Part shown: piece by piece, positions 8,097-43,900 of the stretch
Layout of the letters: every line of letters starts with the position of its first letter
How positions within the stretch are numbered: position 1 is the first letter of the stretch
Origin: Euprymna scolopes
Taxonomy: Eukaryota
Strand: one strand, 5' to 3'
NCBI GenBank assembly: GCA_053919585.1
Contig: CM132799.1
DNA length: 64,000 nucleotides
Notes under the pieces: generated by a model
What the model saw: only the letters and a program-made list of their open reading frames with translations
What the model was told of the DNA's origin: nothing
Databases searched by the model: none
Position numbers and translations under genes: made by a program

Positions 8097-8210
8097 ACAT
8101 CTATCCTACTGTCATTATACTTACCTTTCAGGCATTCCCTTCACTATTTTGATACTGTTGTTACTATAAAATTACTGCAGAAATTTGTCTTTATAACCAG
8201 GTTTCAGGAT

Positions 8211-11200
8211 AATTATCAGCATCACCTACACCACCAAAACTATCAGCATCATCTACACAACCAAAATTATCAGCATCACCTACACCACCAACATAACCAG
8301 CATCATCTACACTACGAAAACTATCAGCATCATCTACACTACCAACACTATCAGCATCACCTACACAACCAACACTATCAGCATCATCTACACTACCAAC
8401 ACTATCAGCATCATCTACACCACCACAATTATCAGCATCACCTACACCATCAAAACTATCAGCATCACCTACATTATCAAAACTATCAGCATCATCTACA
8501 CTACCAAAACTATCATCATAAGCTACACCACCAAAACTATCAGCATCATCTACACTACCAAAACTATCATCATCACCTACACTACCAAAACTATCAGCAT
8601 CACCTACACCACCAAAACTATCAGCATAATCTACACTACAAAAACTATCATCATCACCTAAACTACCAAAACTATCAGCATCACCTACACCACCAAAACT
8701 ATCAGCATCATCTACACTATCAGAATTATCAGCATCACCTACACCACCAAAGCTATCAGCATCACCTACACCACCAAAATTATCAGCATCACCTACACCA
8801 TCAAAATTATGAGCATCACCTTTACTATCAAAACGATCAGCATCACCTACACCACCAAAATTATCAGCATCACCTACACTATCAAAACTATCAGCATCAC
8901 CTATACTACCAAAACTATCAGCATCACCTACACCACCAAAACTATCAGCATCATCTACACTACCAAAACTATCAGCATCACCTACACCACCAAAACTATT
9001 AGCATCACCTACACCACCAAAACGATCAGCATCACCTACACCACCAAAACTATCAGCATAACCTACACTATCAAAACTATCAGCATCACCTACACTATCA
9101 AAACTATCAGTATCACCTACACCACCAAAAATATAACATCATCTACACTACCAAAACTATCAGCATCACCTACACCACCAAAACTATTAGCATCACCTAC
9201 ACTACCAAAACGATCAGCATCACCTACACCACCAAAATTATCAGCATCACCTACACTATCATAAATATCAGCATCACCTACACTACCAAAACTATCAGTA
9301 TAACCAACACCACCAAAAATATCAGCATCATCTACACTATCAAAACTATCAGCATCACCTACACCACCAAAACTATTAGCATCACCTACACCACCAAAAC
9401 TATCAGCATAACCTACACCACCAAAACTATCACAATCACCTACACAACCAAAATTATCAGCATCACCTACACCACCAAAACTATCAGCATCACCTACACT
9501 ACCAAAACTATCAGCATCACCTACACAACCAAAATTATCAGCATCACCTACACCATCAAAACTATCAGCATGTTCTTCACTACAAAACTATCAGCATAAC
9601 CTACACTACCAAAACTATCAGCATCACCTACACTATCAAAACTATCAGCATCACCTACACCACAAAAACTATCAGAATCACCTACACTACCAAAACTATC
9701 AGCATAACCTACACCACCTAAACTATAATCACCTACACCACCAAAACTATCAGCATCAACTACACCACCAAAACTATCATCATAACCTACACCACCAACA
9801 CTATCAGACTCACCTACACCACCAAAACTATCAGCATCACCTACACTACCAAAACTATCAGCATCACCTACACCACCAAAACTATCAGCATAACCCTCAC
9901 CACCAAAACTATCAGCATCACCTACACCACCAAAATTATCAGCATCACCTACACCATAAAACTATCAGCATCACCTTCACTACACATCTATCATCATCAC
10001 CTACACCCCCAAAACTATCAGCATCACCTACACTACCAAAACTATCAGCATCACCGACACTACCAAAACTATCAGCATCACCTACACTACCAAAACTATC
10101 AGCATCACCTACACTACCAAAACTATCAGCATCACCTACACTACCAAAATTATCAGCATCACCTACACCACCAAAACTATCAGCATCACCTACACTATCA
10201 AAACTATCGGCATGACCTACACCACAAAAACTATCAGCATCACCTACACTACCAAACCTATCAGCATCACCTACACTACCAAAATTATCAGCATCACCTA
10301 CACTACCAAAACAATCAGCATCACCTATACTACAAAAACTATCAGCATCACCTACACTACCAAAACTATCAGCATCACCTACACTACCAAAACGATCAGA
10401 ATCACCTACACCACCAAAACTATCAGCATCACCTACACTACCAAAACTATCAGCATCACCTACACTACCAAAACTATCAGCATCACCTACACTACCAAAA
10501 TTATCAGAATTACCTACACCACAAAAACTATCAGCATCACCTTCACTATCAAAACCATCAGCATCACCTACACCACCAAAGCTATCAGCATCACCTACAC
10601 TACCAAAACTATCAGCATCACCTACAAAACCAAAACTATAAGCATGACCTACAAAACCAAAACTATCAGCATCACCTACACTACCAAAATTATCAGCATC
10701 ACCTACACTACCAAAACTATCAGCATCACCTACACTACCAAAACTATCAGCATCACCTACACTACCAAAACTATCAGCATAACCTACACTACCAAAACTA
10801 TCAGCATCACCAACACTACCAAAACTATCAGCATCACCTACACCACCAAAACTATCAGACTTAACCTACACCACCAAAACTATCAGCATCACATACACCA
10901 CCAAAATTATCAGCATAACCTACACAATCAAAACTATCAGCATCACCTTCACTACAAAACTATCAGCATGACCTACACCACCAAAACTATCAGCATCACC
11001 TACACCACCAAAACTATCAGCATCACCTACACTACCAAAATTATCAGCATCACCTACACTACCAAAACAATCAGCATCACCTACACTACCAAAACTATCA
11101 GCATCACCTACACTACCAAAACTATCAGCATCACCTACACTACCAAAACGATCAGCATCACCTACACCACCAAAACTATCAGCATCACCTACACTACCAA

Positions 11201-14200
11201 AACTATCAGCATCACCTACACTACCAAAACTATCAGCATGACCTACACTACCAAAATGATCAGAATCACCTACACCACAAAAACTATCAGCATCACCTTC
11301 ACTATCAAAACCATCAGCATCACCTACACCACCAAAGCTATCAGCATCACCTACACTACCAAAACTATCAGCATAACCTACAAAACCAAAACTATCAGCA
11401 TCACCTACACTATCAAAACTATCAGCATCACCTACACCACCAAAACTATCAGCATCACCTACACTACAAAAACTATCAGCATCACCTTCACTATCAAAAT
11501 TATCAGCATCACCTACACTACCAAAACTATCAGCATAACCTACACCACAAAAACTATCAGCATCACCTACACTACCAAAACTATCAGCATAACCTACACC
11601 ACAAAAACTATCAGCATCACCTACACTACCAAAACTATCAGCATCACCTACACCACCAAAACTATCAGCATCACCTACACTACAAAAACTATCAGCATCA
11701 CCTTCACTACCAAAACTATCAGCATCACCTACACTACCAAAACGATCAGCATCACCTACACCACCAAAACTATCAGCATCACCTACACTACCAAAACTAT
11801 CAGCATCACCTACACTACCAAAACTATCAGCATCACCTACACTACCAAAATTATCAGAATCACCTACAACACAAACACTATCAGCATCACCTTCACTATC
11901 AAAACCATCAGCATCACCTACACAACCAAAGCTATCAGCATCACCTAAACTACCAAAACTATCAGCATCACCTACAAAACCAAAACTATCAGCATCACCT
12001 ACACTATCAAAACTATCAGCATCACATACACTACCAAAACTATCAGCATCACCGACACTACCAAAACTATCAGCATCACCTACACTACCAAAACTATCAG
12101 CATCACCTACACTACCAAAACTATCAGCATCACCTACACTACCAAAATTATCAGCATCACCTACACCACCAAAACTATCAGCATCACCTACACTATCAAA
12201 ACTATCAGCATGACCTACACCACAAAAACTATCAGCATCACCTACACTACCAAAACTATCAGCATCACCTACACTACCAAAATTATCAGCATCACCTACA
12301 CTACCAAAACAATCAGCATCACCTATACTACCAAAACTATCAGCATCACCTACACTACCAAAACTATCAGCATCACCTACACTACCAAAACGATCAGCAT
12401 CACCTACACCACCAAAACTATCAGCATCACCTACACTACCAAAACTATCAGCATCACCTACACTACCAAAACTATCAGCATCACCTACACTACCAAAATT
12501 ATCAGAATCACCTACACGACAAAAACTATCAGAATCACCTTCACTATCAAAACCATCAGCATCACTAACACCACCAAAGCTATCAGTATCACCTACACTA
12601 CCAAAACTATCAGCATCACCTACAAAACCAAAACTATCAGCATCACCTACAAAACCAAAACTATCAGCATCACCTACACTACCAAAATTATCAGCATCAC
12701 CTACACTACCAAAACTATCAGCATCACCTACACTACCAAAACTATCAGCATCACCTACATTACCAAAACTATCAGCATAACTTACACTACCAAAACTATC
12801 AGCATCACCTACACTACCAAAACTATCAGCATCACCTACACCACCAAAACTATCAGCATCACCTACACCACCAAAATTATCAGCATCACATACACCACCA
12901 AAATTATCAGCATAACCTACACAATCAAAACTATCAGCATCACCTTCACTACAAAACTATCAGCATGACCTACATCACCAAAACTATCAGCATCACCTAC
13001 ACCACCAAAACTATCAGCATCACCTACACCACCAAAACTATCAGCATCACCTACACTACCAAAGCTATCAGCATCACCTACACTACCAAAACTATCAGCA
13101 TCACCTACACCACCAAAACTATCAGCATCACCTACACTACCAAAACTATCTACATCACCGACACTACCAAAACTATCAGCATCACCTACACTACCAAAAC
13201 TATCAGCATCACCTACACTACCAAAACTATCAGCATAACCTACACTACCAAAATTATCAGCATCACCTACACCACCAAAACTATCAGCATCACCTTCATT
13301 ATCAAAACTATCAGCATGACCTACACCACAAAAACTATCAGCATCACCTACACTACCAAACCTATCAGCATCACCTACACTACAAAATTATCAGCATCAC
13401 CTACACTACCAAAACTATCAGCATCACCTACACTACCAAAACTATCAGCATCACCTACACTACCAAAACTATCAGCATCACCTACACTACCAAAACGATC
13501 AGCATCACCTACACCACCAAAACTATCAGCATCACCTACACTACCAAAACTATCAGCATAACCTACACCACCAAAACTATCAGCATCACCTACACCACCG
13601 AAACTATCAGCATCACATACACCACCAAAATTATCAGCATAACCTACACAATCAAAACTATCAGCATCACCTACACCACCAAAACTATCAGCATCACCTA
13701 CACCACTAAAACTAACAGCATCTACTACACCACAAAGACTATCGGCATAACCTACACTACCAAAACTATCAGCATCACCTACACCACCAACCCTATCAGC
13801 ATCACCGACACTACCAAAACTATCAGCATCACCTACACTACCAAAACTATCAGCATCACATGCACTACCAAAAATATGAGCATCACCTACACTACCAAAA
13901 CTATCAGCGTAACCTACACTACCAAAACTATCAGCATCAGCTACACTACCAAAACTATCAGCATCACCTACACCACCAAAACTATCAGCATCACCTACAC
14001 TACCAAAACTATCAGCACCACCTACACTACCAAAAATATCAGCATCACCTACACTACAAAAATAATCAGCATCACCTACACCACCAAAACTATCAGCATC
14101 ACCTTCACTATCAAAACTATCAGCATCACCTACACCACCAAAACTATCAGCATCACCTACACTACCAAAACTCTCAGCATCACCTACACAACCAAAACTC

Positions 14201-17200
14201 TCAGCATCACCTACACTACCAAAACTCTCAGCATCACCTACACTACACAAACCATCAGCATCACCTACACTTCCAAAACTATCATTATCACCTACACAAC
14301 CAAAACTATCAGCATCACCTACACTACCAAAACTATCAGCATCACCTACACCACCAAAACTATCAGCATCATCTACACTACCAAAATTATCAGCATCACC
14401 TACACCACCAAAACTATCAGCATCATATTCATTATCAAAACTATCAGCATCACCTACATTACAAAAACAATCAGCATCACCTACACCATCAAAACTATCA
14501 GCATAACCTTCACTATCAAAACTATCAGCATCATCTACACCACCAAAACTATCAGAATCACGTACACTACAAAAACTATCAGCATCACCTACACCACAAA
14601 AACTATCAGCATCATCTACACCATCAAAACTATCAGCCTCACCTTCACTATCAAACTATCAGCATCATCTACACTACAAAAACTATCACCATCACCTATA
14701 CCACTAAAACTATCAGCATCACCAACACCACCAAAAGTATCAGCATCACGTACACCACCAAAACTATCAGCATCACCTACACTACCAACACAATCAGCAT
14801 CATCTACACCGTCAAATTATCCGCATCACTTACACCACCAAAACTATCAGCATCACCTTCACTATAAAAACTATCAGCATCACCTACACTACCAAAACTA
14901 TCAGCATCACCTACACTATCAAAACTATCAGCATCACCTACACTACAAAACCTATCAGCATCACCTACACCACCAAAACTATCAGCATCACCTACACCAC
15001 CAAAACTATCAGCATCACCTACACTATCAAAACTATAAGCATCAACTACACCAGCAAAATTATCAGCATCACCTACACCACCAAAACTATCAGTATCACC
15101 TACACTACCACCAAAATGAGCATCATCTACACCTCCAAAATTATCAGCATCACCTACACTATCAAAACTATCAGCATCACCTACAACACCAAAACTATCA
15201 GCATCACCTACACCACCAAAACTATCAGCATCACCTACACCATCAAAACTATCAGCATCACCTTCACTATCAAAACTATCAGAATCACCTACACCACCAA
15301 AACTATCAGCATCATCTACACTACCAAAATTATCAACATCACCTACACCACCAAAACTATCTGCATCACCTTCACTATCACAACTATCAGCATAACCTAC
15401 ACCACCTAAACTAGCAGCATCACCTACACTATCAAAACTATCAGCATCACCTACACCACCAAAACAATCAGCATCACCTACACTATCAAAACTATCAGCA
15501 TCACCTACACCACCAAAACTATCAGCATCACCTACACTACCAAAACTATCAGCATCACCTTCACTATCAAAACTATCAGCATCACCTAGACTACCAAAAC
15601 TATCAGCATAACCTACACCACAAAAACTATCAGCATCACCTACACTACCAAAACTATCAGCATCCCCTACACCACCAGAACTATCAGAAATAACCTACAC
15701 CAACAAAACTATCAGCATCAACTACACCATCAAAACAATCAGCATCATCTACACAACCAAAACTATCAGCACCAACTTCACTATCAAAACTATCAGCATC
15801 ACCTACACTATCAAAACTATCAGCATCACCTAAACCACAAAAACTATCAGCATCACCTACACCACCAAAACTATCAGCATCAACTACACTACTAAAACTA
15901 TCAGCATCACTTACACAACCAAAACTATCAGAATCACCTACACTATCAAAACTATCAACATCACTTACACCACCTAAACTAGCAGCATCACCTACACCAT
16001 CAAAACTATCATCATTACCTACACCACCAAAACTATCAGCATCACCTACACTATCAAAACTATCAGCATCACCTACACCACCAAAACTATCAGCATCACC
16101 TACACCACCAAAACTATCACCATCACCTACACCACCAAAACTATCACCATCACCTTCACTAACAAAATTATCAGCATCACCTACCCCACCAAAATTATCA
16201 GCATCACCTACACCACCGAAATGATCAGCATCACCTACACCACCAAAATTATCAGCATCACCTACACTACCAAAACTATCAGCATCACCTACACTACCAA
16301 AACTATCAGCATCACCTACACTACCAAAACTATCAGCATCACCAACACCACAAAAAATATCAGCATCACCTACACCAGCAAAACTATCAGCATCACCTAC
16401 ACCACATAAAATTATCAGCATCAACTACACAATCAAAACTATCAGCATAATCTACACTACAAACCTATCAGCATCACCTACACCACCAAAAGGATCAGCA
16501 TCACCTACACCACCAAAACAATCAGCATCACCTACACTACCAAAACTATCAGCATCACCTACACTACCAAAACTATCAGCATCACCTAGACTACCAAAAC
16601 TATCAGCATCACCTACACCACCAAAACTATCAGCATCACCTACACTACCAAATCTATCAGCATCACCTACACTACCAAACAATCAGCATCACCTACACCA
16701 AGAAAACTATCAGCATCACCTACACAACCAAAACTATCAGCATCACCGACACCACCTAAATTATCAGCATCACCTACACCATCAAAACTATCAGCATCAC
16801 CTTCACTACAAAACTATCAGCATCACCTACACCACCAAAACTATCAGCATCACCTACACCACCAAAACTATCAGCATCTACTACACCACAAAGACTATCA
16901 GCATCACCTACACTACCGAAACTATCAGCATCACCTACACCACCAAACCTATCAGCATCACCTACACTACCAAAATTATCAGCATCACCTACACTACCAA
17001 AACTATCAGCATAACCTGCACTACCAAAACTATGAGCATCACCTACACTACCAAAACTATCAGCGTCACCTACACTACCAAAACTATCAGCATCACCTAC
17101 ACTACCAAAACTATCAGCATCACCTACACCACATAAACTATTAGCATCACCTACACTACCAAAACTATCAGCATCACCTACACTACCAAAAATATCAGCA

Positions 17201-20200
17201 TCACCTACACTACCAAAATAATCAGCATCACCTACACCACCAAAACTATCAGCATCACCTTCACTATCAAAACTATGAGCATCACCTACACCACCAAAAC
17301 TATGAGCATCACCTACACTACCAAAACTATCAGCATCACCTACACCACCAAAACTATCAGCATCACCTACACTAATAAAACTCTCAGACTCACCTACACT
17401 ACCAAAACTATCAGCATCACCTACACTACCAAAACTATCAGTATCACCTACACTACACAAACCATCAGCATAACCTACACTACCAAAACTATCATTATCA
17501 CCTACACAACCAAAACTATCAGCATCACCTACACTACCAAAACTATCAGCATCACCTACACCACCAAAACTATCAGCATCATCTACACTACCAAAATTAT
17601 CAGCATCACCTACACAACCAAAACTATCAGCATCATATTCACTATCAAAACTATCAGCATCACCTACATTACAAAACTATCAGCATCACCTACACCATCA
17701 AAACTATCAGCATCGCCTTCACTATCAAAACTATCAGCATCCTCTACACCACCAAAACTATCAGAATCACCTACACTACAAAAACTATCAGCATCACCTA
17801 CACCACCAAAACTATCAGCATCACCTACACTATCAAAACTATCAGCATCACCTACACCACCAAAACTATCAGCATCACCTACACTACCAAATCTATCAGA
17901 CTCACCTTCACTATCAAAACTTTCAGCATCACCTACACTACCAAAACTATCAGCATAACCTACACCACAAAAACTATCAGCATCACCTACACTACCAAAA
18001 CTATCAGCATCACCTACACCACCAAAACTATCAGAAATAACCTACACCAACAAAACTATCAGCATCAACTACACCATCAAAACAATCAGCATCATCTACA
18101 CAACCAAAACTATCAGCACCACCTTCACTATCAAAACTATCAGCATCACCTACACTATCAAAACTATCAGCATCACCTACACCACCAAAACTATCAGCAT
18201 CACCTACACCACCAAAACTATCAGCATAAACAACACTACCACACTTATCAGCATCACTTACACCACCAAAACTATCAGCATCACCTACACTATCAAAACT
18301 ATCAACATCACTTACACCACCTAAACTATCAGCATCACCTACACCATCAAAACTATCATCATTACCTACACCACCAAAACTATCAGCATCACCTACACCA
18401 TCAAAACTATCAGCATCACCTAGACCACCAAAACTATCAGCATCACCTACACCACCAAAACTATCACCATCACCTACACCACCAAAACTATCAGCATCAC
18501 CTTCACTAACAAAATTATCAGCATCACCTACCCCACCAAAATTATCAGCATCACCTACACCACCGAAATTATCAGCATCACCTACACCATCAAAATTATC
18601 AGCATCACCTACACTACCAAAACTATCAGCATCACCTACACTACCAAAACTATCAGCATCACCTTCACTACCAAAACTATCAGCATCACCTACACCACCA
18701 ACACTATCAGCATCACCTATACCACCAAAACTATCAGCATCACCTACACCACCAAAATTATCAGCATCAACTACACAATCAAAACTATCAGCATCACCTT
18801 CACTACAAAACTATCAGCATCACCTACACCACCAAAACTATCAGCATCACCTACACCACCAAAACTATCAGCATCACCTACACTACAAAAACTATCAGCA
18901 TCACCTACACTACCAAAACTATCAGCATCACCTACACTACCAAAACTATCAGCATCACCTACACCACCAAAACTATCAGCATCACCTACACTACCAAATC
19001 TATCAGCATCACCTACACTACCAAAACAATCAGCATCACCTACACCAAGAAAACTATCAGCATCACCTACACCACCAAAACTATCAGCATCACCAACACC
19101 ACCAAAATTATCAGCATCACCTACACCACCAAAACTATCAGCATCACCTACACCACCAAAACTATCAGAATCTACTACACCACAAAGACTATCAGCATCA
19201 CCTACACTACCAAAACTATCAGCATCACCTACACCACCAAACCTATCAGCATCACCTACACTACCAAAACTATTAGCATCACCTACACTACCAAAACTAT
19301 CAGCATCACCTGCACTACCAAAACTATGAGCATCACCTACACTACCAAAACTATCAGCGTCACCTACACTACCAAAACTATCAGCATCACCTACACTACC
19401 AAAACTATCAGTATCACCTTCACCACCAAAACTATTAGCATCACCTACACTACCAAAACTATCAGCATCACCTACACTACCAAAACTATCAGCATCACCT
19501 ACACTACCAAAACTATCAGCATCACCTTCACCACCAAAACTATTAGCATCACCTACACTACCAAAACTATCAGCATCACCTACACTACCAAAAATATCAG
19601 CATCAGCTACACTACCAAAATAATCAGCATCACCTACACCACCAAAACTATCAGCATCACCTTCACTATCAAAACTATGAGCATCACCAACACCACCAAA
19701 ACTATCAGCATCACCTACACTACCAAAACTATCAGCATCACCTACACCACTAAAACTATCAGCATCACCTACACTAATAAAACTCTCAGCATCACCTACA
19801 CTACCAAAACTATCAGCATCACCTACACTACCAAAATTATCAGCATCACCTACACCACCAAAACTATCAGCATCATATTCACTATCAAAACTATCAGCAT
19901 CACCTACATTACCACAACTATCAGCATCACCTACACCATCAAAACTATCATTATAACCTACACAAACAAAACTATCAGCATCACCTACACTACCAAAACT
20001 ATCAGCATCACCTACACCACCAAACTATCAGCATCATCTACACTACCAAAATTATCAGCATCACCTACACCACCAAAACTATCAGCATCATATTCACTAT
20101 CAAAACTATCAGCATCACCTACATTTCCACAACTATCAGCATCACCTACACCACCAAAACTATCAGCATCACCTTCACTATCAAAACTATCAGCATCATC

Positions 20201-23200
20201 TACACCACCAAAACTATCAGAATCACCTACACTACAAAAACTATCAGCATCACCTACACCACCAAAACTATCAGAATCATCTACACCATCAAAACTATCA
20301 GCATCACCTTAACTATCAAAACTATCAGCATCACCTACACCACCAAAACTATCAGCATCACCTAAACTATCAAAACTATCAGCATCACCTACACCAACAA
20401 AACTATCAGCATCACCTACACTATCAAAACTATCAGCATCACCTACACCACCAAAACTATCAGCATCACCTACACTACAAAAACTATCAGCATCACCTTC
20501 ACTATAAAAACTATCAGCATCACCTACACTACCAAAACTATCAGCATAACCTACACCACAAAAACTATCAGCATCACCTACACTACCAAAACTATCAGCA
20601 TCACCTACACCACCAAAACTATCAGAAATAACCTACACCACCAAAACTATCAGCATCAACTACACCATCAAAACAATCAGCATCCTCTACACAACCAAAC
20701 CTATCAGCACCACCTTCACTATCAAAACTATCAGCATCACCTACACTATCAAAACTATCAGCATCACCTACACCACCAAAACTATCAGCATCACCTACAC
20801 CACCAAAACTATCAGCATTTACTACACCACTAAAATTATCAGCATCACTTACACCACCAAAACTATCAGCATCACCTACACTATCAAAACTATCAACATC
20901 ACTTACACCACCTAAACTATCAGCATCACCTACACCATCAAAACTATCATCATTACCTACACCACCAAAACTATCAGCATCACCTACACCATAAAAACTA
21001 TCAGCATCACCTACACCCTCAAAACTATCAGCATCACCTACACCACCAAAACTATCAGCATCACCTACACCACCAAAACTATCAGCATCACCTTCACTAA
21101 CAATATTTATCAGCATCACCTTCCCAACCAAAATTATCAGCATCACCTACACCACCGAAATTATCAGCATCACCTACACCACCAAAATTATCAGCATCAC
21201 CTACACTACCAAAACTATCAGAATCACCTACACTACCAAAACTATCAGCATCACCTACACTACCAAAACTATCAGCATCACCTACACCACCAAAACTATC
21301 CGCATCACCTACACCACCAAAACTATCAGCATCACCTACACCACTAAAATTATCAGCATCACCTACACAATCAAAACTATCAGCATCACCGTTACTACAA
21401 AACTATCAGCATCACCTACACCACCAAAACTATCAGCATCACCTACACTACCAAAACTATCAGCATCACCTACACCACCAAAACTATCAGCATCACCTAC
21501 ACCACCAAAACTATCAGCATCACCTACACTACCAAAACTATCAGCATCACCTACACTACCAAAACTATCAGCATCACCTATACCACCAAAACTATCAGCA
21601 TCACCTACACTACCAAATCTATCAGCATCACCTACACTACCAAAACTATCAGCATCACCTACACCAAGAAAACTATCAGCATCACCTACACCACCAAAAC
21701 TATCAGCATCACCAACACCACCAAAATTATCAGCATCACCTACACCATCAAAACTATCAGCATCACCTTCACTACAAAACTATCAGCATCACCTACACCA
21801 CCAAAACTATCAGCATCAACTACACCACTAAAACTATCAGCATCTACTACACCACAAAGTCTATCAGCATCACCTACACTACCAAAACTATAAGTACCAC
21901 CTACACCACCAAACCTATCAGAATCACCTACGCTACCAAAACTATCAGCATCACCTACACTACCAAAACTATCAGCATCACCTGCACTACCAAAACTATG
22001 AGCATCACCTACACTACCAAAACTATCAGCGTCACTTACACTACCAAAACTATCAGCATCACCTACACTACCAAAACTATCAGCATAACCTACACCACCA
22101 AAACTATTAGCATCACCTACACTACCAAAACTATCAGCATCACCTACACTACCAAAAATATCAGCATCACTTACACTACCAAAATAATCAGCATCACCTA
22201 CACCACCAAAACTATCAGCATCACCTTCACTATCAAAACTATGAGCATCACCTACACCACCAAAACTATCAGCATCACCTACACTACCAAAACTATCAGC
22301 ATCACCTACACCACCAAAACTATCAGCATCACCACCACTAATAAAACTCTCAGCATCATCTACACTACCAAAACTATCAGCATCACCTACACTACCAAAA
22401 CTATCAGCATCACCTACACTACACAAACCATCAGCATCACCTACACTACCAAAACTATCATTATCACCTATACAACCAAAACTATCAGCATCACCTACAC
22501 TACCAAAACTATCAGCATCACCTACACCACCAAAACTATCAGCATCATCTACACTACCAAAATTATCAGCATCACCTACACCACCAAAACTATCAGCATC
22601 ATATTCACTATCAAAACTATCAGCATCACCTACATTACCAAAACTATCAGCATCACCTACACCATCAAAACTATCAGCATCACCTTCACTCTCAAAACTA
22701 TCAGCATCATCTACACCACCAAAACTATCAGAATCACCTACACTACAAAAACTATCAGCATCACCTACACCACCAAAACTATCAGCATCATCTACACCAT
22801 CAAAACTATCAGCATCACCTTCACTATCAAAACTATCAGCATCACCTACACCACCAAAACTATCAGCATCACCTACACTACCAAAACTATCAGCATCACC
22901 TTCACTATCAAAACTATCAGCATCACCTACACTACCAAAACTATCAGCATCACCAACACCACCAAAATTATCAGCATCACCTACACCATCAAAACTATCA
23001 GCATCACCAACACCACCAAAATTATCAGCATCACCTACACCATCAAAACTATCAGCATCACCTTCACTACAAAACTATCAGCATCACCTACACCACCAAA
23101 ACTATCAGCATCAACTACACCACTAAAACTATCAGCATCTACTACACCACAAAGTCTATCAGCATCACCTACACTACCAAAACTATAAGTACCACCTACA

Positions 23201-26200
23201 CCACCAAACCTATCAGAATCACCTACGCTACCAAAACTATCAGCATCACCTACACTACCAAAACTATCAGCATCACCTGCACTACCAAAACTATGAGCAT
23301 CACCTACACTACCAAAACTATCAGCGTCACTTACACTACCAAAACTATCAGCATCACCTACACTACCAAAACTATCAGCATAACCTACACCACCAAAACT
23401 ATTAGCATCACCTACACTACCAAAACTATCAGCATCACCTACACTACCAAAAATATCAGCATCACTTACACTACCAAAATAATCAGCATCACCTACACCA
23501 CCAAAACTATCAGCATCACCTTCACTATCAAAACTATGAGCATCACCTACACCACCAAAACTATCAGCATCACCTACACTACCAAAACTATCAGCATCAC
23601 CTACACCACCAAAACTATCAGCATCACCACCACTAATAAAACTCTCAGCATCATCTACACTACCAAAACTATCAGCATCACCTACACTACCAAAACTATC
23701 AGCATCACCTACACTACACAAACCATCAGCATCACCTACACTACCAAAACTATCATTATCACCTATACAACCAAAACTATCAGCATCACCTACACTACCA
23801 AAACTATCAGCATCACCTACACCACCAAAACTATCAGCATCATCTACACTACCAAAATTATCAGCATCACCTACACCACCAAAACTATCAGCATCATATT
23901 CACTATCAAAACTATCAGCATCACCTACATTACCAAAACTATCAGCATCACCAACACCATCAAAACTATCAGCATCACCTTCACTCTCAAAACTATCAGC
24001 ATCATCTACACCACCAAAACTATCAGAATCACCTACACTACAAAAACTATCAGCATCACCTACACCACCAAAACTATCAGCATCATCTACACCATCAAAA
24101 CTATCAGCATCACCTTCACTATCAAAACTATCAGCATCACCTACACCACCAAAACTATCAGCATCACCTACACTACCAAAACTATCAGCATCACCTTCAC
24201 TATCAAAACTATCAGCATCACCTACACTACCAAAACTATCAGCATAACCTACACCACAACAACTATCAGCATCACCTACACTACCAAAACTATCAGCATC
24301 ACCTACACCACCAAAACTATCAGAAATAACCTACACCACCAAAACTATCAGAATCAACTACACCATCAAAAAAATCAGCATCATCTACACAACCAAACCT
24401 ATCAGCACAACCTTCACTATCAAAACTATCAGCATCACCTACACTATCAAAACTATCAGCATCACCTACACCACCAAAACTATCAGCATCACCTACACCA
24501 CCAAAACTATCAGCATCAACTACACTACTAAAATTATCAGAATCACTTACACCACCAAAACTATCAGCATCACCTACACGATCAACACTATCAACGTCAC
24601 TTACACAACCTAAACTATCAGCATCACCTACACCATCAAAACTATCATCATTACCTACACCACCAAAACTATCAGCATCACCTACACCATCAAAACTATC
24701 AGCATCACCTACACCACCAAAACTATCAGCATCACCTACACCACCAAAACTATCAGCATCACCTACACCACCAAAACTATCAGCATCACCTTCACTAACA
24801 AAATTATCAGCATCACCTACCCCACCAAAATTATCAGCAACACCTACACCACCGAAATTATCAGCATCACCTACACCACCAAAATTATCAGCATCACCTA
24901 CACTACCAAAACTATCAGCATCACCTACACTACCAAAACTATCAGCATCACCTACACTACCAAAACTATCAGCATCACCTACACCACCAAAACTATCAGC
25001 ATCACCTACACCACCAAAACTATCAGCATCCCCTACACCACCAAAATTATCAGCATCACCTACACAATCAAAACTATCAGCATCACCTTCACTACAAAAC
25101 TATCAGCATCACCTACACCACCAAAACTATCAGCATCACCTACACCACCAAAAATATCAGCATCACCTACACCACCAAAACTATCAGCATCACCTACACT
25201 ACCAAAACTATCAGCATCACCTACACTACCAAAACTGTCAGCATCACCTACACTACCAAAACTATCAGCATCACCTACACCACCAAAACTATCAGCATCA
25301 CCTACACTACCAAATCTATCAGCATCACCTACACTACCAAAACTATCAGCATCACCTACACCAAGAAAACTATCAGCATCAAATACACCACCAAAACTAT
25401 CAGCATCACCAACACCACCAAAATTATCAGCATCATCTACACCATCAAAACTATCAGCATCACCTTCACTACAAAACTATCAGCATCACCTACACCACCA
25501 AAACTATCAGCATCAACTACACCACTAAAACTATCAGCATCTACTACACCACAAAGACTATCAGCATCACCTACACTACCAAAACTATCAGCATCACCTA
25601 CACCACCAAACCTATCAGCATCACCTACACTACCAAAACTATCAGCATCACCTACACTACCAAAACTATCAGCATCACCTACACTACCAAAACTATTAGC
25701 ATCACCTACACTACCAAAACTATCAGCATCACCTACACTACCAAAACTATCAGCATCACCTACACCACCAAAACTATTAGCATCACCTACACTACCAAAA
25801 CTATCAGCATCACCTACACTACTAAAAATATCAGCATCACCTACACTACCAAAATAATCAGCATCACCTACACCACCAAAACTATCAGCATCACCTTCAC
25901 TATCACAACTATCAGCATCACCTAGACCACCAAAACTATCAGCATTACCCACACTACCAAAACTATCAGCATCACCTACACCACCAAAACTATCAGCATC
26001 ACCTACACTACCAAAACTCTCAGCATCACCTACACTACCAAAACTATCAGCATCACCTACACTACCAAAACTATCAGCATCACCTACACTACACAAACCA
26101 TCAGCATCACCTACACCACCAAAACTATTAGCATCATCTACACTACCAAAATTATCAGCATCACCTACACCACCAAAACTATCAGCATCATATTCACTAT

Positions 26201-29200
26201 CAAAACTATCAGCATCACCTACATTACCAAACTATCAGCATCACCTACACCATCAAAACTATAAGCATCACCTTCACTATCAAAACAATCAGCATCATCT
26301 ACACCACCAAAACTATCAGAATCACCTACACTACAAAAACTATCAGCATCACCTACACCACCAAAACTATCAGCATCATCTACACCATCACAACTATCAG
26401 CATCACCATCACTATCAAAACTATCAGCATCATCTACACTACAAAAACTATCACCATCACCTATACCACTAAAACTATCAGCATCACCTACACCACCAAC
26501 AGTATCAGCATCACGTACACCACCAAAACTATCAGCATACGCCTACACTACCAACGCAATCAGCATCATCTACACCGTCAAATTATCAGCATCACTTACA
26601 CCACCAAAACTATCAGCATCACCTTCACTAAAAAAACTATCAGCATCACCTACACTACCTAAACTATCAGCATAACCTACACTATCAAAACAATCAGCAT
26701 CACCTACACTACCAAAACTATCAGCATCACCTACACCACCAAAACTATCAGCATCACCTACACCACCAAAACTATCAGCATCACCTACACTATCAAAACT
26801 ATCAGCATCACCTTCACCAGCAAAATTATCAGCATCACCTACACCACCAAAACTATCAGTATCACCTACACTACCACCAAAATGAGCATCATCTACACCT
26901 CCAAAACTATCAGTATCACCTACATTATCAAAACTATCAGCATCACCTACAACACCAAAACTATCAGCATCACCTACACCACCAAAACTATCAGCATCAC
27001 CTACACCATCAAAACTATCAGCATCACCTTCACTATCAAAACTATCAGCATCACCTACACCACCAAAATTATCAGCATCATCTACACTACCAAAATTATC
27101 AACATCACCTACACCACCTTAACTATCAGCATCACCTTCACTATCAAAACTATCAGCATCACCTACACCACCAAAACTATCAGCATCACCTACACTATCA
27201 AAACTATCAGCATCACCTACACCACCAAAACTATCAGCATTACCTACACTATCAAAACTATCAGCATCACCTACACCTTAAAACTATCAGTATCACCTAC
27301 ACTACCAAAACTATCAGCATCACCTTCACTATCAAAACTATCAGCATCACCTACACTACCAAAACTATCAGCATCACCTACACCACAAAAACTATCAGCA
27401 TCACCTACACTACCAAAACTATCAGCATCACCTACACCACCAAAACTATCAGAAATAACCTACACCAACAAAACTATCAGCATCAACTACACCATCAAAA
27501 CAATCAGCATCATCTACACAACCAAAACTATCAGCACCACCTTCACTATCAAAACTATCAGCATCACCTACACTATCAAAACTATCAGCATCACCTACAC
27601 CACCAAAACTATCAGCATCACCTACACCACCAAAACTATCAGCATCAACTACACAACTAAAATTATCAGCATCACTTACACCACCAAAACTATCAGCATC
27701 AGCTACACTATCAAAACTATCAACATCACTTACACCACCTAAACTATCAGCATCACCTACACCATCAAAACTATCATAATTACCTACACCACCAAAACTA
27801 TCAGCATCACCTACACCATCAAAACTATAAGCATCACCTAAATAACCAAAATTATAAGCATCACCTACACCACCAAAACTATCAGCATCACCTACACCAC
27901 AAAAACTATCAGCATCACCTTCACTAACAAAATTATCAGCATCACCTACCCCACCAAAACTATCAGCATCACCTACACCACCGAAATTATCAGCATCACC
28001 TACACCACCAAAATTATCAGCATCACCTTCACCACCAAAAATATCAGCATCACCTGCACCACCAATATTATCAGTATCACCTTCACCACCAAAATTATCA
28101 GCATCACCTGCACCACCAAAATTATCAGTATCACATACCCCACCAAAACTATCAGCATAACTTACACCACCAAAAATATCAGCATATCCTACACTACCAA
28201 AATTATCATCATCACCTACACCACCAAAAATATCAGCATCATCTACACTACAAAAACTATCATCATCACCTACACTACCAAAATTATCAGCATCACCTAC
28301 ACCATAAAAACTATCAGCATCACCTTCACTATCAAAACTATCAGCATCACCTACACTACCAAAACTATCAGCATCACCTACACTATCAATACTATCAGCA
28401 TCACCTACACTACCAAAACTATCAGCATCACCTACACTACCAAAATTATCAGCATCACCTACACTACCAAACCTATGAGCATCACCTACACTACCAAAGC
28501 TATCAGCATCACCTACACTACCAAAACTATCAGCATCACCTACGCCACCAAAGCTATCAGCATCACCTACACCACCAAAACTATCAGCATCACCTACACC
28601 ACCAAAAATATCAGCATCACCTACACTACCAAAACTATCAGCATCACCTACACTACCAAAACTATCAGCATCACCTACACTACACAAACCCTCAGCATCA
28701 CCTACACTACAAAAACTATCATTATCACCTACACAACCAAAACTATCAGCATCACCTACACTACCAAAACTATCAGCATCACCTACACCACCAAAACTAT
28801 CAGCATCATCTACACTTCCAAAATTATCAGCATCACCTACACCCCCAAAACTATCAGCATCATATTCACTACCAAAACTATCAGCATCACCTACATTACC
28901 AAAACTATCAGCATCACCTACACCATCAAAACTATCAGCATCACCTTCACTATCAAAACTATCAGCATCATCTACACCACCAAAACTATCAGAATCACCT
29001 ACACTACAAAAACTATCAGCATCACCTACACCACCAAAACTATCAGCATCATCTACACCATCAAAACTATCAGCATCACCTTCACTATCAAAACTATCAG
29101 CATCATCTTCACTACAAAAACTATCACCATCAACTATACCACTAAAACTATCAGCATCACCTACACCACCAAAAGTATTCATCACGTGCACCACCAAAAC

Positions 29201-31300
29201 TATCAGCATCACCTACACTACGAACACAATCAGCATCATCTACACCGTCAAATTATCAGCATCACTTACACCAATAAAACTATCAGCATCACCTTCACTA
29301 TAAAAACTATCAGCATCACCTACACTACCAAAACTATCAGCATAACCTACACTATCAAAACTATCAGCATCACCTACACTACCAAAACTATCAGCATCAC
29401 CTACACCACCAAAACTATCAGCATCACCTACACCACCAAAACTATCAGCATCACCTACACTATCAAAACTAAAAGCATCACCTACACCAGCAAAATTATC
29501 AGCATCACCTACACCACCAAAACTATCAGTATCACCTACACTACCACCAAAATGAGCATCATCTACACCTCCAAAACTATCAGCATCACCTACACTATCA
29601 AAACTATCACCATCACTTACAACACCAAAACTATCAGCATCACCTACACCACCAAAACTATCAGCATCACCTACACCATCAAAACTATCAGCATCACCTT
29701 CACAATCAAAACTATCAGCATCACCTACACCACCAAAATTATCAGCATCATCTACACTACCAAAATTATCAACATCACCTACACCACCAAAACTATCAGC
29801 ATCACCTTCACTATCAAAACTATCAGCATCACCTACACCACCAAAACTATCACCATCACCTACACTATCAAAACTATCAGCATCACCTACACCACCAAAA
29901 CTATCAGCATCACCTACACTATCAAAACTATCAGCATCACCTACACTACCAAAACTCTCAGCATCACCTACACTACCAAAACTATCAGCATCACCTTCAC
30001 TATCAAAACTATCAGCATCACCTACACTACCAAAACTATCAGCATAACCTACACCACAAATACTATCAGCATCACCTACACTACCAAAACTATCAGCATC
30101 ACCTACACCACCAAAACTATCAGAAATAACGTACACCACCAAAACTATCAGCATCAACTACACAATCAAACAATCAGCATCATCTACACAACCAAAACTA
30201 TCAGCATCACCTTCACTATCAAAACTATCAGCATCACCTACACTATCAAAACTATCAGCATCACCTATACCACCAAAACTATCAGCATCACCTACACCAC
30301 CAAAACTATCAGCATCAACTACACCACTAAAATTATCAGCATCACTTACAGCACCAAAACTATCAGCATCACCTACACTATCAAAACTATCAACATCATC
30401 TACACCACCTAAACTATCAGCATCACCTACACCATCAAAACTATCATCATTACCTACACCACCAAAACTATCAGCATCACCTACACCATCAAAACTATCA
30501 GCATCACCTACACCACCAAAACTATTAGCATCACCTACACCACCAAAGCTATCAGCATCACCTACACCACCAAAACTATCAGCATCACCTTCACTAACAA
30601 AATTATCAGCATCACCTACCCCACCAAAATTATCAGCATCACCTACACCACCAAAATTATCAGCATCACCTACACCACCAAAATTATCAGCACGACCTTC
30701 ACCACCAAAATTATCAGCATCACCTGCACCACCAATATTATCAGTATCACCTACACCACCAAAATTATCAGCATCACCTGCACCACCAAAATTATCAGCA
30801 TCACCTACACCACCAAAACTATCAGCATCACCTACACCACCAAAAATATCAGCATCACCTACACTACCAAAATTATCATCATCACCTACACCACCAAAAC
30901 TATCAGCATCATCTACACTACAAAAACTATCATCATCACCTACACTACCAAAATTATCAGCATCACCTACACCATAAAAACTATCAGCATCACCTACACT
31001 ATCAAAGCTATCAGCATCACCTACACTACCAAAACTATCAGCATCACCTACACTATCAATACTATCAGCATCACCTACACTACCAAAACTATCAGCATCA
31101 CCTACACCACCAAAATTATCAGCATCACCTACACTACCAAAACTATGAGCATCACCTACACTACCAAAGCTATCAGCATCACCTACACTACCAAAACTAT
31201 CAGCATCACCTACGCCACCAAAGCTATCAGCATCACCTACACCACCAAAACTATCAGCATCACCTACGCCACTTAAGCTTTCAGCATCACATACACCACT
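8211..31300. repeat. ~23-kb tandem array of a 27-bp minisatellite/satellite (roughly 850 units) with higher-order repeats
   Basis: Consensus ACCAAAACTATCAGCATCACCTACACY. It reads as the 9-aa repeats TKTISITYT, HHQNYQHHL, PPKLSASPT (+) and GVGDADSFG (-), with recurrent 26/28-bp variants and scattered stops. Confidence 0.99.
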
Positions 31301-31735
31301 ATCGCTCACAGACCCACTTGCCCTTTGTTCAAATGAACAGCTCTTGAAGACAAATTTGACAAATTTCTGGAACTAATTTTACCCGTGACTTGAAATGAAA
31401 GACTTACATCATATCCATTACCAAAACCACTAGAAAAATGGTTGGATCATTTTATCGTTCCAGAAAATATGTCACTCTCGACGCAACTTTCTACCTTTAC
31501 AAGAGTCAAGTACATCCAAAGATAGAATTTTATCACATGTGTGTTGGAGCTCTTAAAATATTCTTTCCTGCCTTGACAGAGTACAAAAACGTCTTCAAAA
31601 TTTAGTGGACGAAGACCATTTCGCCTCCCTACTTCTTTTTTTCTCAAAGAAGAGACGTTGTAACTCTGTCTTTGTTATTTAATCGATATTTTTATGGCGG
31701 TGCTCGACTGAGCTTCAATCTATGTTCCCTCCATG
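31295..31735 (+). mobile_element. Decayed 5'-truncated CR1-clade LINE fragment (related to subfamily B) fused to the satellite end
   Basis: Translates (with lesions) as HHYRSQTHLPFVQMN...FDKFLELIFTRDLK*KTYIISITKTTRKMVGSFYRSRKYVTLDATFYLYKSQVHPKIEF. This is colinear with LGLTLTSDLKWNTYIKSVAKVAGKMVGSFYRYRRYLTADVILYLYKSQVRPMMEY of ORF 41274-41609. Confidence 0.88.
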
Positions 31736-32406
31736 CTAAATGTGTCTGCTTCTGGGACGACTATAACATGTTCGTCTTCATATCTAATGTAAATAAATTT
31801 CTATTGAGCCCTCTTAAATAATGTAAGCTCTACCCTTATAACTGAGCATATAATTACACAATCTATTCAACCCTTAACGCTTATCCTAGATTAGCTCTAG
31901 GGCTTGATAAGTGGTAACTTCCTCTCAAGTAAAAAAGAACAAAAAACACCTTATTTTAGCAGTTCCAACCTGACTGATGGTTATTAGGTAGAATTACAAT
32001 AAGTGAGTGTTTAGCTCTTGTTTTGTGGCCTCACATAAGTAGAAATTAGTGTCTGTCTTCTCATCATAAAAGCCTGATGGAGATTTATGGCCACTTTTTT
32101 GTCTCTTTCGCGTTTTTAACAATTAATATTGAGACATTTTATAACAAGACTTTTTTTTCTGGTGCAACTGTAATAAGTATTCGGTTATTTTCCTATTGAA
32201 ACTGTATTGAAACTGTACAGGCAGGGGAAAAACCGAGATCATTTTATTAATATAGAGAATAAAAAGAAAAAATGTAGGTGAAATATATTGTAAGATACAT
32301 TTGGTCAACATAACTAATTTAAATGTTTTTAGATAAAATTGTATTGTACCTCTACATTTTTAAAAGATAATTATATTATAATATTAACATACAACATGTC
32401 AACTCT

Positions 32407-37637: not shown

Positions 37638-37874
37638 CATTTCTTAATATTTATTTTTTAAATGCTTTTTAACGTCTGTCAGAGCGATCTAATCATTATA
37701 TGATGACCTGCGCATCAGAGCTAAATTGACCGATTAATTCAACTGAAAGTGCTCAATGATAAGAAACGAGTTTTCAAACGTATTTATATATGTATATGTT
37801 AAACATATTTAATAATTAAAAGCATAAATCAATAATAAGTAAATAGAACTTATATATAATTAGAAATATTATTA

Positions 37875-40915: not shown

Positions 40916-40918
<3 letters not shown>

Positions 40919-43900
40919 TTTTTACAAGGTGGTCACCACTTATCAAGGCCCAGAAGCCACTCGGGGATAAGGGTTATTGCGTGTACAGTACGTTAGTGTT
41001 GAGATTTGATAAAGTGTCTTACTTAAGGGGATAGTTCATCAGGAATTTGTTTATGTTGGACTTGAAGACATCCAGGTTGTAGTCAGGTGGGAAAAAAGCA
41101 AACAGAACAGAGTTTCAAAGGCGCGCACTTCTAAGACAGAAGCTTTGTTCATGGAATCTACATTTTGGTTTTGGCACAGATAAAGAGTGGAGAAAATTTT
41201 TGACAGTGGTTTCAGCTAGACGGGTGTTTTTCATGAAAGATTGGCGAGGGGGGACCAGGGATTGGAGCTCAGATTAGCACTTGCCATGGAAGTAACGATA
41301 AAAGGAAGACAGACTCGCAATGTCTCTCCTGTGTGAGAGAGGTTGCAGGGAAGAGAAAAGGGCATCCCCCACTAAGCCACAAAGCCTATTTTGTACTCTG
41401 TCAAGGCAGGATAGGCTGTTTTTAGCAGCTCCTACCCAGATGTGGCAGCAGTACTCCATCATTGGACGTACTTGGCTTTTATATAGATAAAGAATTACAT
41501 CAGCAGTGAGATATCTTCTGTAGCGGTAGAAGGATCCTACCATTTTTCCAGCGACCTTGGCAACAGACTTGATATATGTGTTCCATTTCAGGTCAGAAGT
41601 TAAGGTCAAGCCAAGAAGCTTATCAAAACATGGTGGTTCCCCTAGCGAGAGTCATCCATTTCAATTGATGGCAGATGTGGATCAGAGTGTGGATGATGTA
41701 AAGATAGGAGCTTAGTTTTAGATTAATTAAAAGTAACCAGCCATCTCTTCCCCCACTGTTACCATAGATGCTCGTGTCATCAGCATAGATGTTAATGAAT
41801 AATTTAAGTATGTGTTTTGGGAAATCATTCATGTAGATCAGGAAGAGAGTTGGGCCCAGGATGGACCCCTGAGGAACTCCAGCATTAATACTGAGGGCCT
41901 CTGATTTCTGCCCATCAACCACTACTCTTATGAGCCTATCAGAGAGAAATGATTTAATTATTGAGAAAACATTTCCAGTTATACCATAGCTGGAAATCTC
42001 TTAAAGTAGGCCCTTATGCCATACCTTATCGAAGGCTTTTGATATGTCAAGAGCAATTTCTCTAGAGAGAAAGCCTTTGTCAAGAGATATTACCATTAGC
42101 ACATCTGCTGTAGACATGGCAGGACGGAAACCATATTGCATGTCACTAAGAAGGTTATTTCTGCTGAGGTGGTTGACTACTTCTCTATTTAATATGGATT
42201 CCAGCACCTTACTCATGACACACAGAAGACTTATTCATCTGTACTGAGAGGGGGACGACTTATCACCTGAATTCTTAAATACAGGGCATACTGATGAGAT
42301 TTTCCAAGGTGTTGGGAACCACTTCTCCTTAATAACGCTTAAATAGTTTTCTAAGTATGGGGTCAAGTTCTGGTTGAATGTCGTCAGGGCCAGTTGCTTT
42401 ACTGGATCAAGGTTCTTGATTAGCTTGGCGACCTCATGCACAGATGTTTGTATGTTGCATAATGTGTTGTCTGTTATAGGGGGAAATACGAGGAGTTGAT
42501 GGCCTTCTTCGCATAGGGTAGAATTAGTTGCAAAGTTCTTGGCAAATAGTTTGGTCTTGTCTGATGCTGACGAGATTACTTCAGGTCTATTGATGATGGT
42601 TGGGATAGAATACACGCTTCTGTTCAGGATCCTGCACAGCTACTTTGAATTTAACGGACTGAGCATATAGCTCTCTTGCATTTTTTATTACTCTTTTACA
42701 GTGGTTGCTGGCAATTGTGAAAGCAGCTTTAGTCTCAGTACATCTATTACGTTGGTAGCTATGGAAAAACTGATTTCTGTGCACGATGGCAGCAGCACAT
42801 TCTGGGGAGAACCATGGCAGCTGTTAGGTTTTGTTGGAATTTTTTGGATGGTATGAATCGGTCTATACCTACAATTAACCATTCGGTCGAGTCTGATACT
42901 ATGGAGGACACATCCTTTTTAAAGGTGAAATGAAAGGGTAGATCAGATATAAATGTATGGAAGCTATCTCAGTCAGCTATAGAGTATTGATATACAGTAC
43001 AGTGGAGAGGTCGTTTTTATCTTAACTGATACAACTGAGTGGTCAGAAGATCCCAGAGGAGACAGAACAGAACATGAACATAGCTCAAGGGAAGTTGTGA
43101 GAAAAAGGTCTAGAAGGCTAGCGTACTGACCAGAAGTATCAGGCACATGGGTGGGTTCGTGAACAATCTGAGTGAGGTCATAAGCAATAGCGAAATCATG
43201 ACAGAACCTCCCCTCATCATCTGTCTTGTTAGAGTGGGTCAGCCATTCCACATTGTGGGCATTGAAGTCACCACAAATGTGGATGTTAGCCGTGGAGGCG
43301 ATAGAGGGCAAATATAAATGCAGTGGTGTAAGCAAGTGCAACCCGGAAGCACATACAAGGTAAATTAGGGTCTTCACTGGAGATATCCCTACCACACAGA
43401 AAGCCATCTTTAATGTAGGCACATATTCCATGCCTATGGCGATCTTGGGGGTCAGATTTAGATGTTAAGTTAGAATATCCTTTAATTATAAACTCGTCTA
43501 GAGAAGTGGTCGGCCCTATGCCAGTTTCGCTTAGGAAGAATATGTCCGGTTTCGTGTCATGTAATTGGGTTTCAACCTCTGGAACGTTGGAACATAGACG
43601 CCTGATGTTGGAGAAGGAGACATGGTAGTAGGGGTCTACATTGGAGGATGGGATTCTAGGTTTATTCGTGATTTTTTTCTGGAGATATTTCATGTTGAGG
43701 ATTTGGGATTGTTGGAACAGGTCGACAGACTTGGTTAGAGCAGGACAGAGAGGGAAAGCAAGAGAGAAAAAGACAGGATTTTTTTGTAGCTCATGATAAG
43801 GTAACGCTGTAACAATTACCCACTAGTATGGCATCGAGAGGCCCCACCAGAAACTACTGCATGGTCCAGAATCAATTCACCAGATGGCAATACAGTAGCC

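What the first reader, a model, noticed from the sequence alone, without database searches (positions are those of the whole stretch)
31200..31735. The 23-kb satellite appears to have arisen from, or at the truncation point of, a CR1 LINE reverse-transcriptase gene
Seen: the last units grade with no spacer into LINE coding sequence (...ACTTAAGCTTTCAGCATCACATACACCAC|TATCGCTCACAGACCCACTTGCCCTTTGTTCAAATG = HHYRSQTHLPFVQM). The related LINE in this window (41660-41722, minus) reads TCTAAAACTAAGCTCCTATCTTTACATCAT-CCACACTCTGATCCACATCTGCCATCAATTGAAATG (SKTKLLSLHH-PHSDPHLPSIEM) at the colinear position. The unit ACCAAAACTATCAGCATCACCTACACCAC shares AAAACTA and ATC..TACA.CA with that KTKLLSLHH segment. 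No LINE sequence is visible left of the array. Inference: a ~27-bp piece at the 5' truncation junction was tandemised (slippage or template jumps during integration) and then amplified about 850-fold. That would be a satellite birth site with the parent still attached.
Basis: partly seen in the sequence, partly recalled or inferred. Interest (0 to 1): 0.8.

Follow-up and report, generated by a model that had tools for sequence, protein, structure and literature searches.

The report
Satellite array abutting a dead LINE
A 23-kb block of about 856 copies of a 27-base repeat in a mollusc genome ends exactly at the broken 5' end of an old, dead LINE element and was probably, though not provably, seeded from that junction, which is a known way for satellite DNA to arise.

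Summary
A 27-bp tandem array (8214-31299, about 856 units) runs without spacer into a decayed, 5'-truncated LINE tail (about 31300-31925, + strand). That tail is colinear with a near full-length copy at about 40925-43700 (-). There is no LINE sequence to the left of the array. A contig from an independent DNA run bridges the junction.

A related species has the same LINE copy (96% identical) and the same satellite, but only about 100 units against about 2,100 unit-equivalents here.

The array is not a gene. Frameshifting unit variants recur through it, a polyA RNA run gave no reads on it, and its best frame has no protein homologue.

Derivation of the unit from the LINE is plausible but not proven. 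The last unit matches the colinear LINE segment 18/31 ungapped, the best of 5,660 positions in that copy. The array consensus matches 16/31 at the same register. A relative's protein aligns in one frame into the last unit. However, composition-matched shuffles give only p = 0.02-0.06, and gapped tests are not significant. LINE identity fades towards background (37-44%) between about 31330 and 31270.

I put about 0.6 on seeding at the LINE junction. This is a new member of a known kind. Earlier notes of this scan report cleaner LINE-born satellites elsewhere in this genome; I did not check them.

The parts
8214..31272 (+). Body of the 27-bp tandem array. The consensus is TATCAGCATCACCTACAC[T/C]ACCAAAAC, with about 855 units in 314 distinct variants. 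It grew by irregular block duplications of about 1.3-9 kb.
   Evidence: TRF. Segmentation and per-position variation. Recurring 26- and 28-mer variants. Exact-unit lag peaks at 48, 87, 99 and 349 units.
31273..31299 (+). Terminal, divergent unit, and the candidate relic of the parent segment. It reads LSFQHHIHH in the LINE frame. It differs from the array consensus at 5 of 31 compared bases, and its net match to LINE41 rises from 16 to 18.
   Evidence: 18/31 ungapped matches to LINE41 at the colinear register, the single best of 5,660 positions. Ties for the most LINE-like of 855 units. tblastn with P0206 starts at 31273 in frame +2. Ranks in the top 4-7 of 847 units in the substitution control.
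31300..31330 (+). Transition zone. It is weakly LINE-like (the HLPFVQM motif against family HLPSIEM / SLPPIAM). The first 18 bases also resemble a decayed unit.
   Evidence: 48-55% identity to LINE41 and L005 against a 37-44% noise floor. Protein alignments.
31331..31925 (+). Unambiguous 5'-truncated, decayed LINE tail: the end of the RT domain, the C-terminal domain and the 3' end. It carries multiple stops and frameshifts.
   Evidence: 70-76% DNA identity to LINE41 and L005. Shared 3' end motif GATAAGTGGT.AC followed by an A-run. Very high summed depth of family copies in DNA runs.
8100..8213 (+). Left flank of the array. It is neither LINE nor array sequence.
   Evidence: blastn and tblastx against LINE copies give noise only. 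Unit similarity score is 9 against a background of 8.3.
40925..43700 (-). LINE41, a near full-length but frameshifted APE+RT LINE of the same family, used as the reference. Its colinear segment (codons KTKLLSLHHP...) lies at 41655-41722.
   Evidence: ORFs, sequence, 3' end followed by (TCA)11. The relative P0003 carries Exo_endo_phos plus RVT_1.

Best explanation
The break lies within the last 35 or so codons of its reverse-transcriptase domain. A 27-bp stretch at that 5' junction then duplicated in tandem. This stretch lies wholly or partly inside the LINE, covering the codons after the KTKL motif, which include a low-complexity run of His (CAY) codons. The most likely cause is replication slippage or unequal exchange.

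A drifted copy of that unit was later amplified by repeated unequal exchange and block duplication to about 856 units (23 kb). Most of this growth happened after the split from a close relative that carries only about 100 units.

The array is non-coding, shows no polyA transcripts, and has no evident function.

Shown: the anatomy, the junction, the lack of coding capacity, and presence in the sister species. Inferred: descent of the unit from the LINE, and the order of events.
For: Geometry:
- The array ends where LINE homology begins. There is no array to the right of the LINE (score 5 against a background of 8.3) and no LINE to its left.
- For the unit to contain no LINE sequence, a duplication breakpoint would have to fall within the few bases between the LINE's true end and the first recognisable LINE base. 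About 27 other positions give a unit that contains LINE sequence.

Sequence:
- The terminal unit matches LINE41 18/31 at the colinear register, the unique best of 5,660 positions. The consensus matches 16/31 (p_pos = 0.0025).
- All nine family members sit in the upper tail at this register.
- Among the 55 units that are as far from the array consensus as the terminal unit (26/31), the mean LINE match is 14.0 and the maximum is 18, the terminal unit's value.
- P0206 aligns in a single frame starting at 31273.
- Ordinary units placed in the LINE frame add about 10 BLOSUM62 points against LINE41 and P0007, through the HH codons.
- Identity to LINE41 and L005 in the terminal unit (48-55%) equals that of the adjoining LINE stretch at 31300-31330.

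Distribution:
- Array depth in X1 is about 2.5 times what this array alone predicts. Organism B has about 100 units, plus the orthologous LINE and junction contigs.
- Array words were found only in organisms A and B.

Precedents: satellites derived from LINE ORF2 and from CR1 are listed in PMC9659126.
Against: - Composition-preserving shuffles of the query give only p = 0.056 (consensus) and p = 0.024 (terminal unit). The actual array phase ranks 2nd of 27 rotations, not 1st.
- With gapped Smith-Waterman, the best unit hit in LINE41 lies elsewhere. It scores 16, which 13% of simulated (first-order Markov) sequences and 2 of 11 control segments also reach. The colinear window ranks only in the top 2-60%, depending on the copy.
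- Optimised alignments of ordinary units against non-homologous upstream LINE sequence already reach 37-44% identity.
- Two incompatible alignments both look significant: one places AAG on the Lys codon, the other reads the frame as LSF. At least one must be chance.
- With L005, the closest relative, the colinear position is not the best hit.
- No LINE copy closer than about 76% to the flank copy could be obtained.
- No target-site duplication was found.
Confidence: 0.6

Rival explanations
1. The LINE is only a neighbour. The 27-bp seed lay entirely in non-LINE DNA just upstream of the LINE's 5' end and expanded there. Any resemblance between unit and LINE comes from shared C/A-rich low complexity.
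For: Gapped similarity tests are not significant. Composition-matched shuffles give p = 0.02-0.06. The noise floor of optimised alignments is 37-44%, against 48-55% for the terminal unit.
Against: The duplication's right breakpoint would have to coincide within a few bases with the LINE's 5' end. The terminal unit's best ungapped LINE41 match falls at the colinear register. An in-frame protein alignment reaches 31273.
Confidence: 0.22
2. The array, or a short proto-array, is older than this LINE copy. The LINE integrated exactly at its right edge, and its 5' end was joined through microhomology with the CAY-rich unit, giving a seamless-looking junction.
For: LINE 5' ends are commonly joined at microhomologies (general knowledge of target-primed reverse transcription). 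The family has CAT/CAC His codons at exactly this place.
Against: There is no array-like remnant to the right of the LINE 3' end. An insertion within a few bases of the array edge is improbable unless the array was then tiny. The LINE copy appears much older (about 24-26% from its nearest relatives) than unit-to-unit divergence in the array (about 12%). Matches to the LINE are spread over 31 bases rather than confined to a few junction bases.
Confidence: 0.12
3. The array is a giant repetitive coding exon on the minus strand. One minus frame reads (F-G-G/S-V-G-D-A-D-S)n, the period is 9 codons, and indels are very rare.
For: One minus frame is open within each unit. Open stretches reach 587 aa. 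The indel rate is very low.
Against: Real 26- and 28-bp unit variants recur and shift the frame, so each of the three minus frames holds 1,062-1,436 stops. In that frame the third codon positions vary least and variation tracks base identity, with C variable and A stable. PolyA run X16 gave zero reads on the array, the junction and the unique flank. No homologue at E <= 0.001 was found among the 8,000 best-matching candidates scored from the 5.8-billion-protein set.
Confidence: 0.02
4. The junction is an assembly artefact: a mis-join or an inflated repeat.
For: Long arrays are hard to assemble. The assembly and the read contigs differ at three T/A positions near the junction.
Against: An X1 contig at single-copy depth bridges 31274 with at least 37 bases on each side. 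X6 (another species) has contigs covering about 31294-31347 and 31355-31633. Array depth in X1 is even higher than the assembled length predicts.
Confidence: 0.01

Closest known systems
Satellites derived from LINE coding sequence (PROsat of Phodopus from L1 ORF2; Pvc20 of harbour seal from L1 ORF2), as tabulated in PMC9659126
   Same: A tandem array whose unit is proposed to descend from a short piece of a LINE ORF2 / RT region. Non-coding and restricted to one lineage.
   Different: In this case the unit is very short (27 bp) and its homology to the LINE is statistically marginal. The proposed parent copy is still attached at one end, and the other end of the array is not LINE.
Chicken HinfI (SCR1) repeat derived from CR1 3' UTR plus partial ORF2 (PMC9659126 table)
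   Same: A satellite linked to a CR1-type LINE.
   Different: The chicken unit spans the 3' UTR and part of ORF2 and is clearly homologous to CR1. This unit comes from the end of the RT domain and is only weakly similar. The CR1 clade was not verified for this LINE.
Earlier notes of this scan on the same genome: satellite born inside one dead LINE (s1-279859), and arrays from a Gypsy integrase (s1-279866) and a zinc-finger exon (s1-268937)
   Same: Same genome and the same proposed route: in-place amplification of a short coding fragment with the parent still attached.
   Different: Those notes describe parent sequence on both sides or clear in-frame homology. In this window the parent is on one side only and the homology is marginal. 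I did not check those notes.

Membership tests
TE-derived satellite DNA | Long head-to-tail array of one unit | tested here: met
   855.7 copies of a 27-bp unit with 88% matches. 770 units lie within 3 mismatches against 0 expected.
TE-derived satellite DNA | Unit homologous to a segment of the element beyond chance | tested here: inconclusive
   Ungapped colinear matches of 16-18/31, with positional p = 0.0002-0.0025 against LINE41. Shuffle p = 0.024-0.056. Gapped tests are not significant.
TE-derived satellite DNA | Array contiguous and colinear with the parent element copy | tested here: met
   No spacer. The LINE frame runs open from 31273 to 31344. The junction is bridged by an independent contig.
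TE-derived satellite DNA | Satellite confined to one or a few loci that carry the parent, not an older dispersed family | tested here: inconclusive
   Summed array depth in X1 is about 2.5 times this array, and junction depth is about 2.6-4 times single copy. There are no other copies in the window. Loci could not be mapped genome-wide.
CR1-clade LINE | ORF2 with an APE endonuclease and an RT domain | tested here: met
   The relative P0003 has Exo_endo_phos, Exo_endo_phos_2 and RVT_1. LINE41 has ORFs that tblastx matches to the other LINE copies in the window.
CR1-clade LINE | RT phylogeny places it inside CR1 rather than L2, Rex1, Jockey or another clade | not tested
   No reference set was available in the tools. 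Sources give no telling names for the relatives.
CR1-clade LINE | 3' end without poly(A), ending in short repeats | tested here: inconclusive
   Both copies end in GATAAGTGGT.AC... followed by an A-run. LINE41 is then followed by (TCA)11.
Protein-coding tandem-repeat exon | Continuous ORF, transcripts, and homologues | tested here: not met
   Recurring frameshift variants and stops. Zero polyA reads. No protein homologue.

The most novel reading that the evidence does not exclude
The first tandem copies were made by the LINE's own reverse transcriptase during integration. Repeated template jumps or slippage over the last 27 nt copied would make retrotransposition itself seed the satellite at the 5' junction.
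Probability: 0.05. Interest if true: 0.6.

Novelty: new member of a known kind. Interest (0 to 1): 0.3.

Why it matters
If the derivation holds, this locus keeps both a satellite and the single dead LINE copy it grew from. It also comes with a sister species holding about 20-fold fewer units. That would give a small natural series for dating and measuring satellite expansion.

The route itself, from a transposable-element fragment to a satellite, is well documented. Earlier notes of this scan report cleaner examples in the same genome. The value here is therefore as one more, less clean, example.

Tried and rejected
- Gapped Smith-Waterman of the unit against LINE41 and seven other family members. 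The best hit lies elsewhere in LINE41 (codons SSASDKTKL). It scores 16, which 13% of simulated (first-order Markov) sequences reach.
- Protein search with the flank's 68-aa stop-free piece: no candidates.
- Metagenome scan for a two-unit pattern: 0 hits.
- Laying reads at 80% likeness to recover closer LINE copies across 31262-31352. The family is very abundant from 31353 rightwards, but this copy is too diverged further left, so only 2-3 contigs cover that stretch.
- TSD search between the left flank and the region after the LINE 3' end: only a chance 7-mer.
- Search for array remnants to the right of the LINE: none.
- Coding-exon reading of the minus strand: rejected.
- A regular higher-order repeat: not found, only irregular block duplications.
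- I built no LINE consensus. I compared individual copies instead.

Full report
**What is there**

TRF finds one array at 8214-31296 with period 27, 855.7 copies, 88% matches and essentially no indels. My segmentation gives 856 units. The consensus is TATCAGCATCACCTACAC[T/C]ACCAAAAC. There are 314 distinct unit variants, and the two commonest make up 29% of units. The array lies entirely on one strand. No unit copy with up to 7 mismatches exists elsewhere in the 64-kb window.

Unit-length variants of 26 and 28 bp recur every 1.3-3.7 kb. Exact-unit matches peak at lags of 48, 87, 99, 232, 320 and 349 units within particular sub-regions. The array therefore grew by irregular block duplications, not by a regular higher-order repeat.

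**The flanks**

The array runs without spacer into sequence that is 70% identical to the window's LINE copy at 41248-41595 (-). That sequence is 74-76% identical over 340-370 bp to LINE41 and to a public contig, L005. Relatives' ORF2 C-terminal proteins hit it by tblastn at E = 1e-17 to 1e-27.

The tail shares the family's 3' end (GATAAGTGGT.AC followed by an A-run) and ends near 31925, not 31735. The copy is decayed, with several stops and frameshifts.

The family encodes an APE endonuclease plus RVT_1. The truncation point, at the KTKL motif, lies inside the RVT_1 match (P0003 residues 527-770, KTKL at 734).

Left of the array (7115-8213) there is no LINE homology. Right of the LINE 3' end there is no array-like remnant (score 5 against a background of 8.3 +/- 2.0). 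No TSD was found. The wider window is rich in transposable elements: further LINE copies and a Tc1/mariner remnant.

**Independent read evidence**

- In DNA run X1, single-copy depth is about 14. One contig at depth 13.3 bridges the junction, with at least 37 bases on each side of 31274.
- Summed array depth in X1 is about 2.5 times what 856 units predict. That corresponds to about 2,100 unit-equivalents, so this is not a dispersed high-copy satellite.
- From 31353 rightwards, the LINE family piles up to summed depths of 1e4-1e5.
- Organism B (X6, single-copy depth about 3.4) has the orthologous LINE: a contig at 31355-31633 with 11 differences and 4 gaps. It also has two short contigs covering about 31294-31347. 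Array depth there corresponds to only about 100 units.
- Array words were detected only in organisms A and B.
- PolyA RNA run X16 gave no reads on the array, the junction or the unique flank.
- X1 and X6 contigs read A where the assembly has T at 31274, 31302 and 31326.

**Not a gene**

One minus frame is open within each unit, reading (FGGVGDADS)n. The recurring 26- and 28-mers shift that frame, so each of the three minus frames holds 1,062-1,436 stops. Per-position variation follows base identity, with C variable and A stable, rather than codon position. A 587-aa piece of this frame has no homologue at E <= 0.001 among the 8,000 best-matching candidates scored from the 5.8-billion-protein set.

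**Does the unit descend from the LINE? Evidence for**

- MAFFT places the last unit's ACTTAAGCTT on the family's ACTAAGCTT, the Thr-Lys-Leu codons.
- In an ungapped 31-base comparison, the terminal unit (31269-31299) matches LINE41 at 18/31 exactly at the colinear register. This is the single best of 5,660 positions on both strands. The array consensus gives 16/31 at the same register, a score that 0.25% of positions reach or exceed.
- Across nine family members, positional p-values at this register all lie in the upper tail. They are 0.0002-0.25 for the terminal unit and 0.0025-0.38 for the consensus.
- The terminal unit ties for the most LINE-like of 855 units. Among the 55 units equally far from the consensus, the mean LINE match is 14.0 and the maximum is 18, the terminal unit's value.
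- tblastn with P0206 aligns in one frame from 31273, pairing LSFQHH... with LLSFNRH....
- I replaced the terminal unit in turn with each of 847 in-register units. The real terminal unit ranks in the top 4-7 for three relatives. Ordinary units already add about 10 BLOSUM62 points against LINE41 and P0007, through the His-His codons that the family carries at this position.

**Evidence against**

- Composition-preserving shuffles of the query give only p = 0.024 (terminal unit) and p = 0.056 (consensus). The real array phase ranks second of 27 rotations.
- Gapped Smith-Waterman puts the unit's best LINE41 hit elsewhere. It scores 16, which 13% of simulated (first-order Markov) sequences and 2 of 11 control segments reach. 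The colinear window ranks between the top 2% and the top 64%, depending on the copy.
- In optimised global alignments, identity to LINE41 and L005 is 63-74% at 31331-31395 and 48-55% at 31300-31330. It is also 48-55% in the terminal unit. Ordinary units aligned to non-homologous upstream LINE sequence already reach 37-44%. LINE homology therefore fades, and no sharp 5' end can be placed.
- Two incompatible alignments both look good: AAG placed on the Lys codon, and the LSF frame. This shows how easily this CAY-rich region produces apparent matches.

**Weighing the evidence**

Geometry favours a seed that includes LINE sequence. For the unit to contain none, a duplication breakpoint would have to fall in the few bases between the LINE's real 5' end and the first recognisable LINE base. 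About 27 other positions give a unit that is partly or wholly LINE. The alternative, a LINE landing exactly at the edge of an older array, needs its own coincidence and leaves no array on the far side.

Combining geometry with the marginal similarity, I put about 0.6 on 'seeded at, and at least partly from, the LINE's 5' end after its insertion'. I put about 0.22 on a purely non-LINE seed next to the LINE, and about 0.12 on a pre-existing array. Coding exon and assembly artefact are close to excluded.

Nothing indicates that the tandem copies arose during integration. Slippage or unequal exchange in a low-complexity His-codon run is sufficient to explain them.

**Comparison with what is known**

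Satellites derived from LINE ORF2 (PROsat, Pvc20) and from CR1 (the chicken HinfI repeat) are on record (PMC9659126). Earlier notes of this scan describe cleaner LINE-, Gypsy- and zinc-finger-born arrays in the same genome; I did not check them. If the derivation holds, this is a further and weaker member of a known kind. Its one additional feature is a sister species with about 20-fold fewer units.

Noticed in passing
window 40880-40925 (-): LINE41 ends in GATAAGTGGTGACC..GTAAAAAAAAA and is followed directly by (TCA)11. This could be a tail repeat or the target site; it is unresolved.
   Followed up: partly
window 32354-32990: An extremely abundant repeat of unknown type. Summed depth in X1 is 3-9e4 against 14 for single copy. 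It is also abundant in organism B and is represented in polyA RNA reads.
   Followed up: no
window 35687-36665 (-): Remnant of a Tc1/mariner-type transposase: DDE_3 (E = 4.9e-14) and a weak HTH_38 match.
   Followed up: partly
window 31274, 31302, 31326: The assembly has T where contigs of another DNA run of the species and of the sister species read A. In the LINE frame, two of these changes turn TTA and TAT into TAA.
   Followed up: partly
window 1-1850 (-), 3760-4016, 37147-37650 (-), 50302-50834 (-): Further LINE copies and fragments, including a second subfamily (LVSFNNYKKPSLPPIAM at the colinear segment).
   Followed up: partly
window 62774-63376: A 210-bp tandem repeat with 2.9 copies at 96% identity.
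   Followed up: no
L005:2930-3020 and window 41655-41722: LINE41 and the public contig L005 differ by a 1-nt indel in the His-codon stretch that follows the KTKL motif. In L005 this splits the ORF into two overlapping gene calls.
   Followed up: partly
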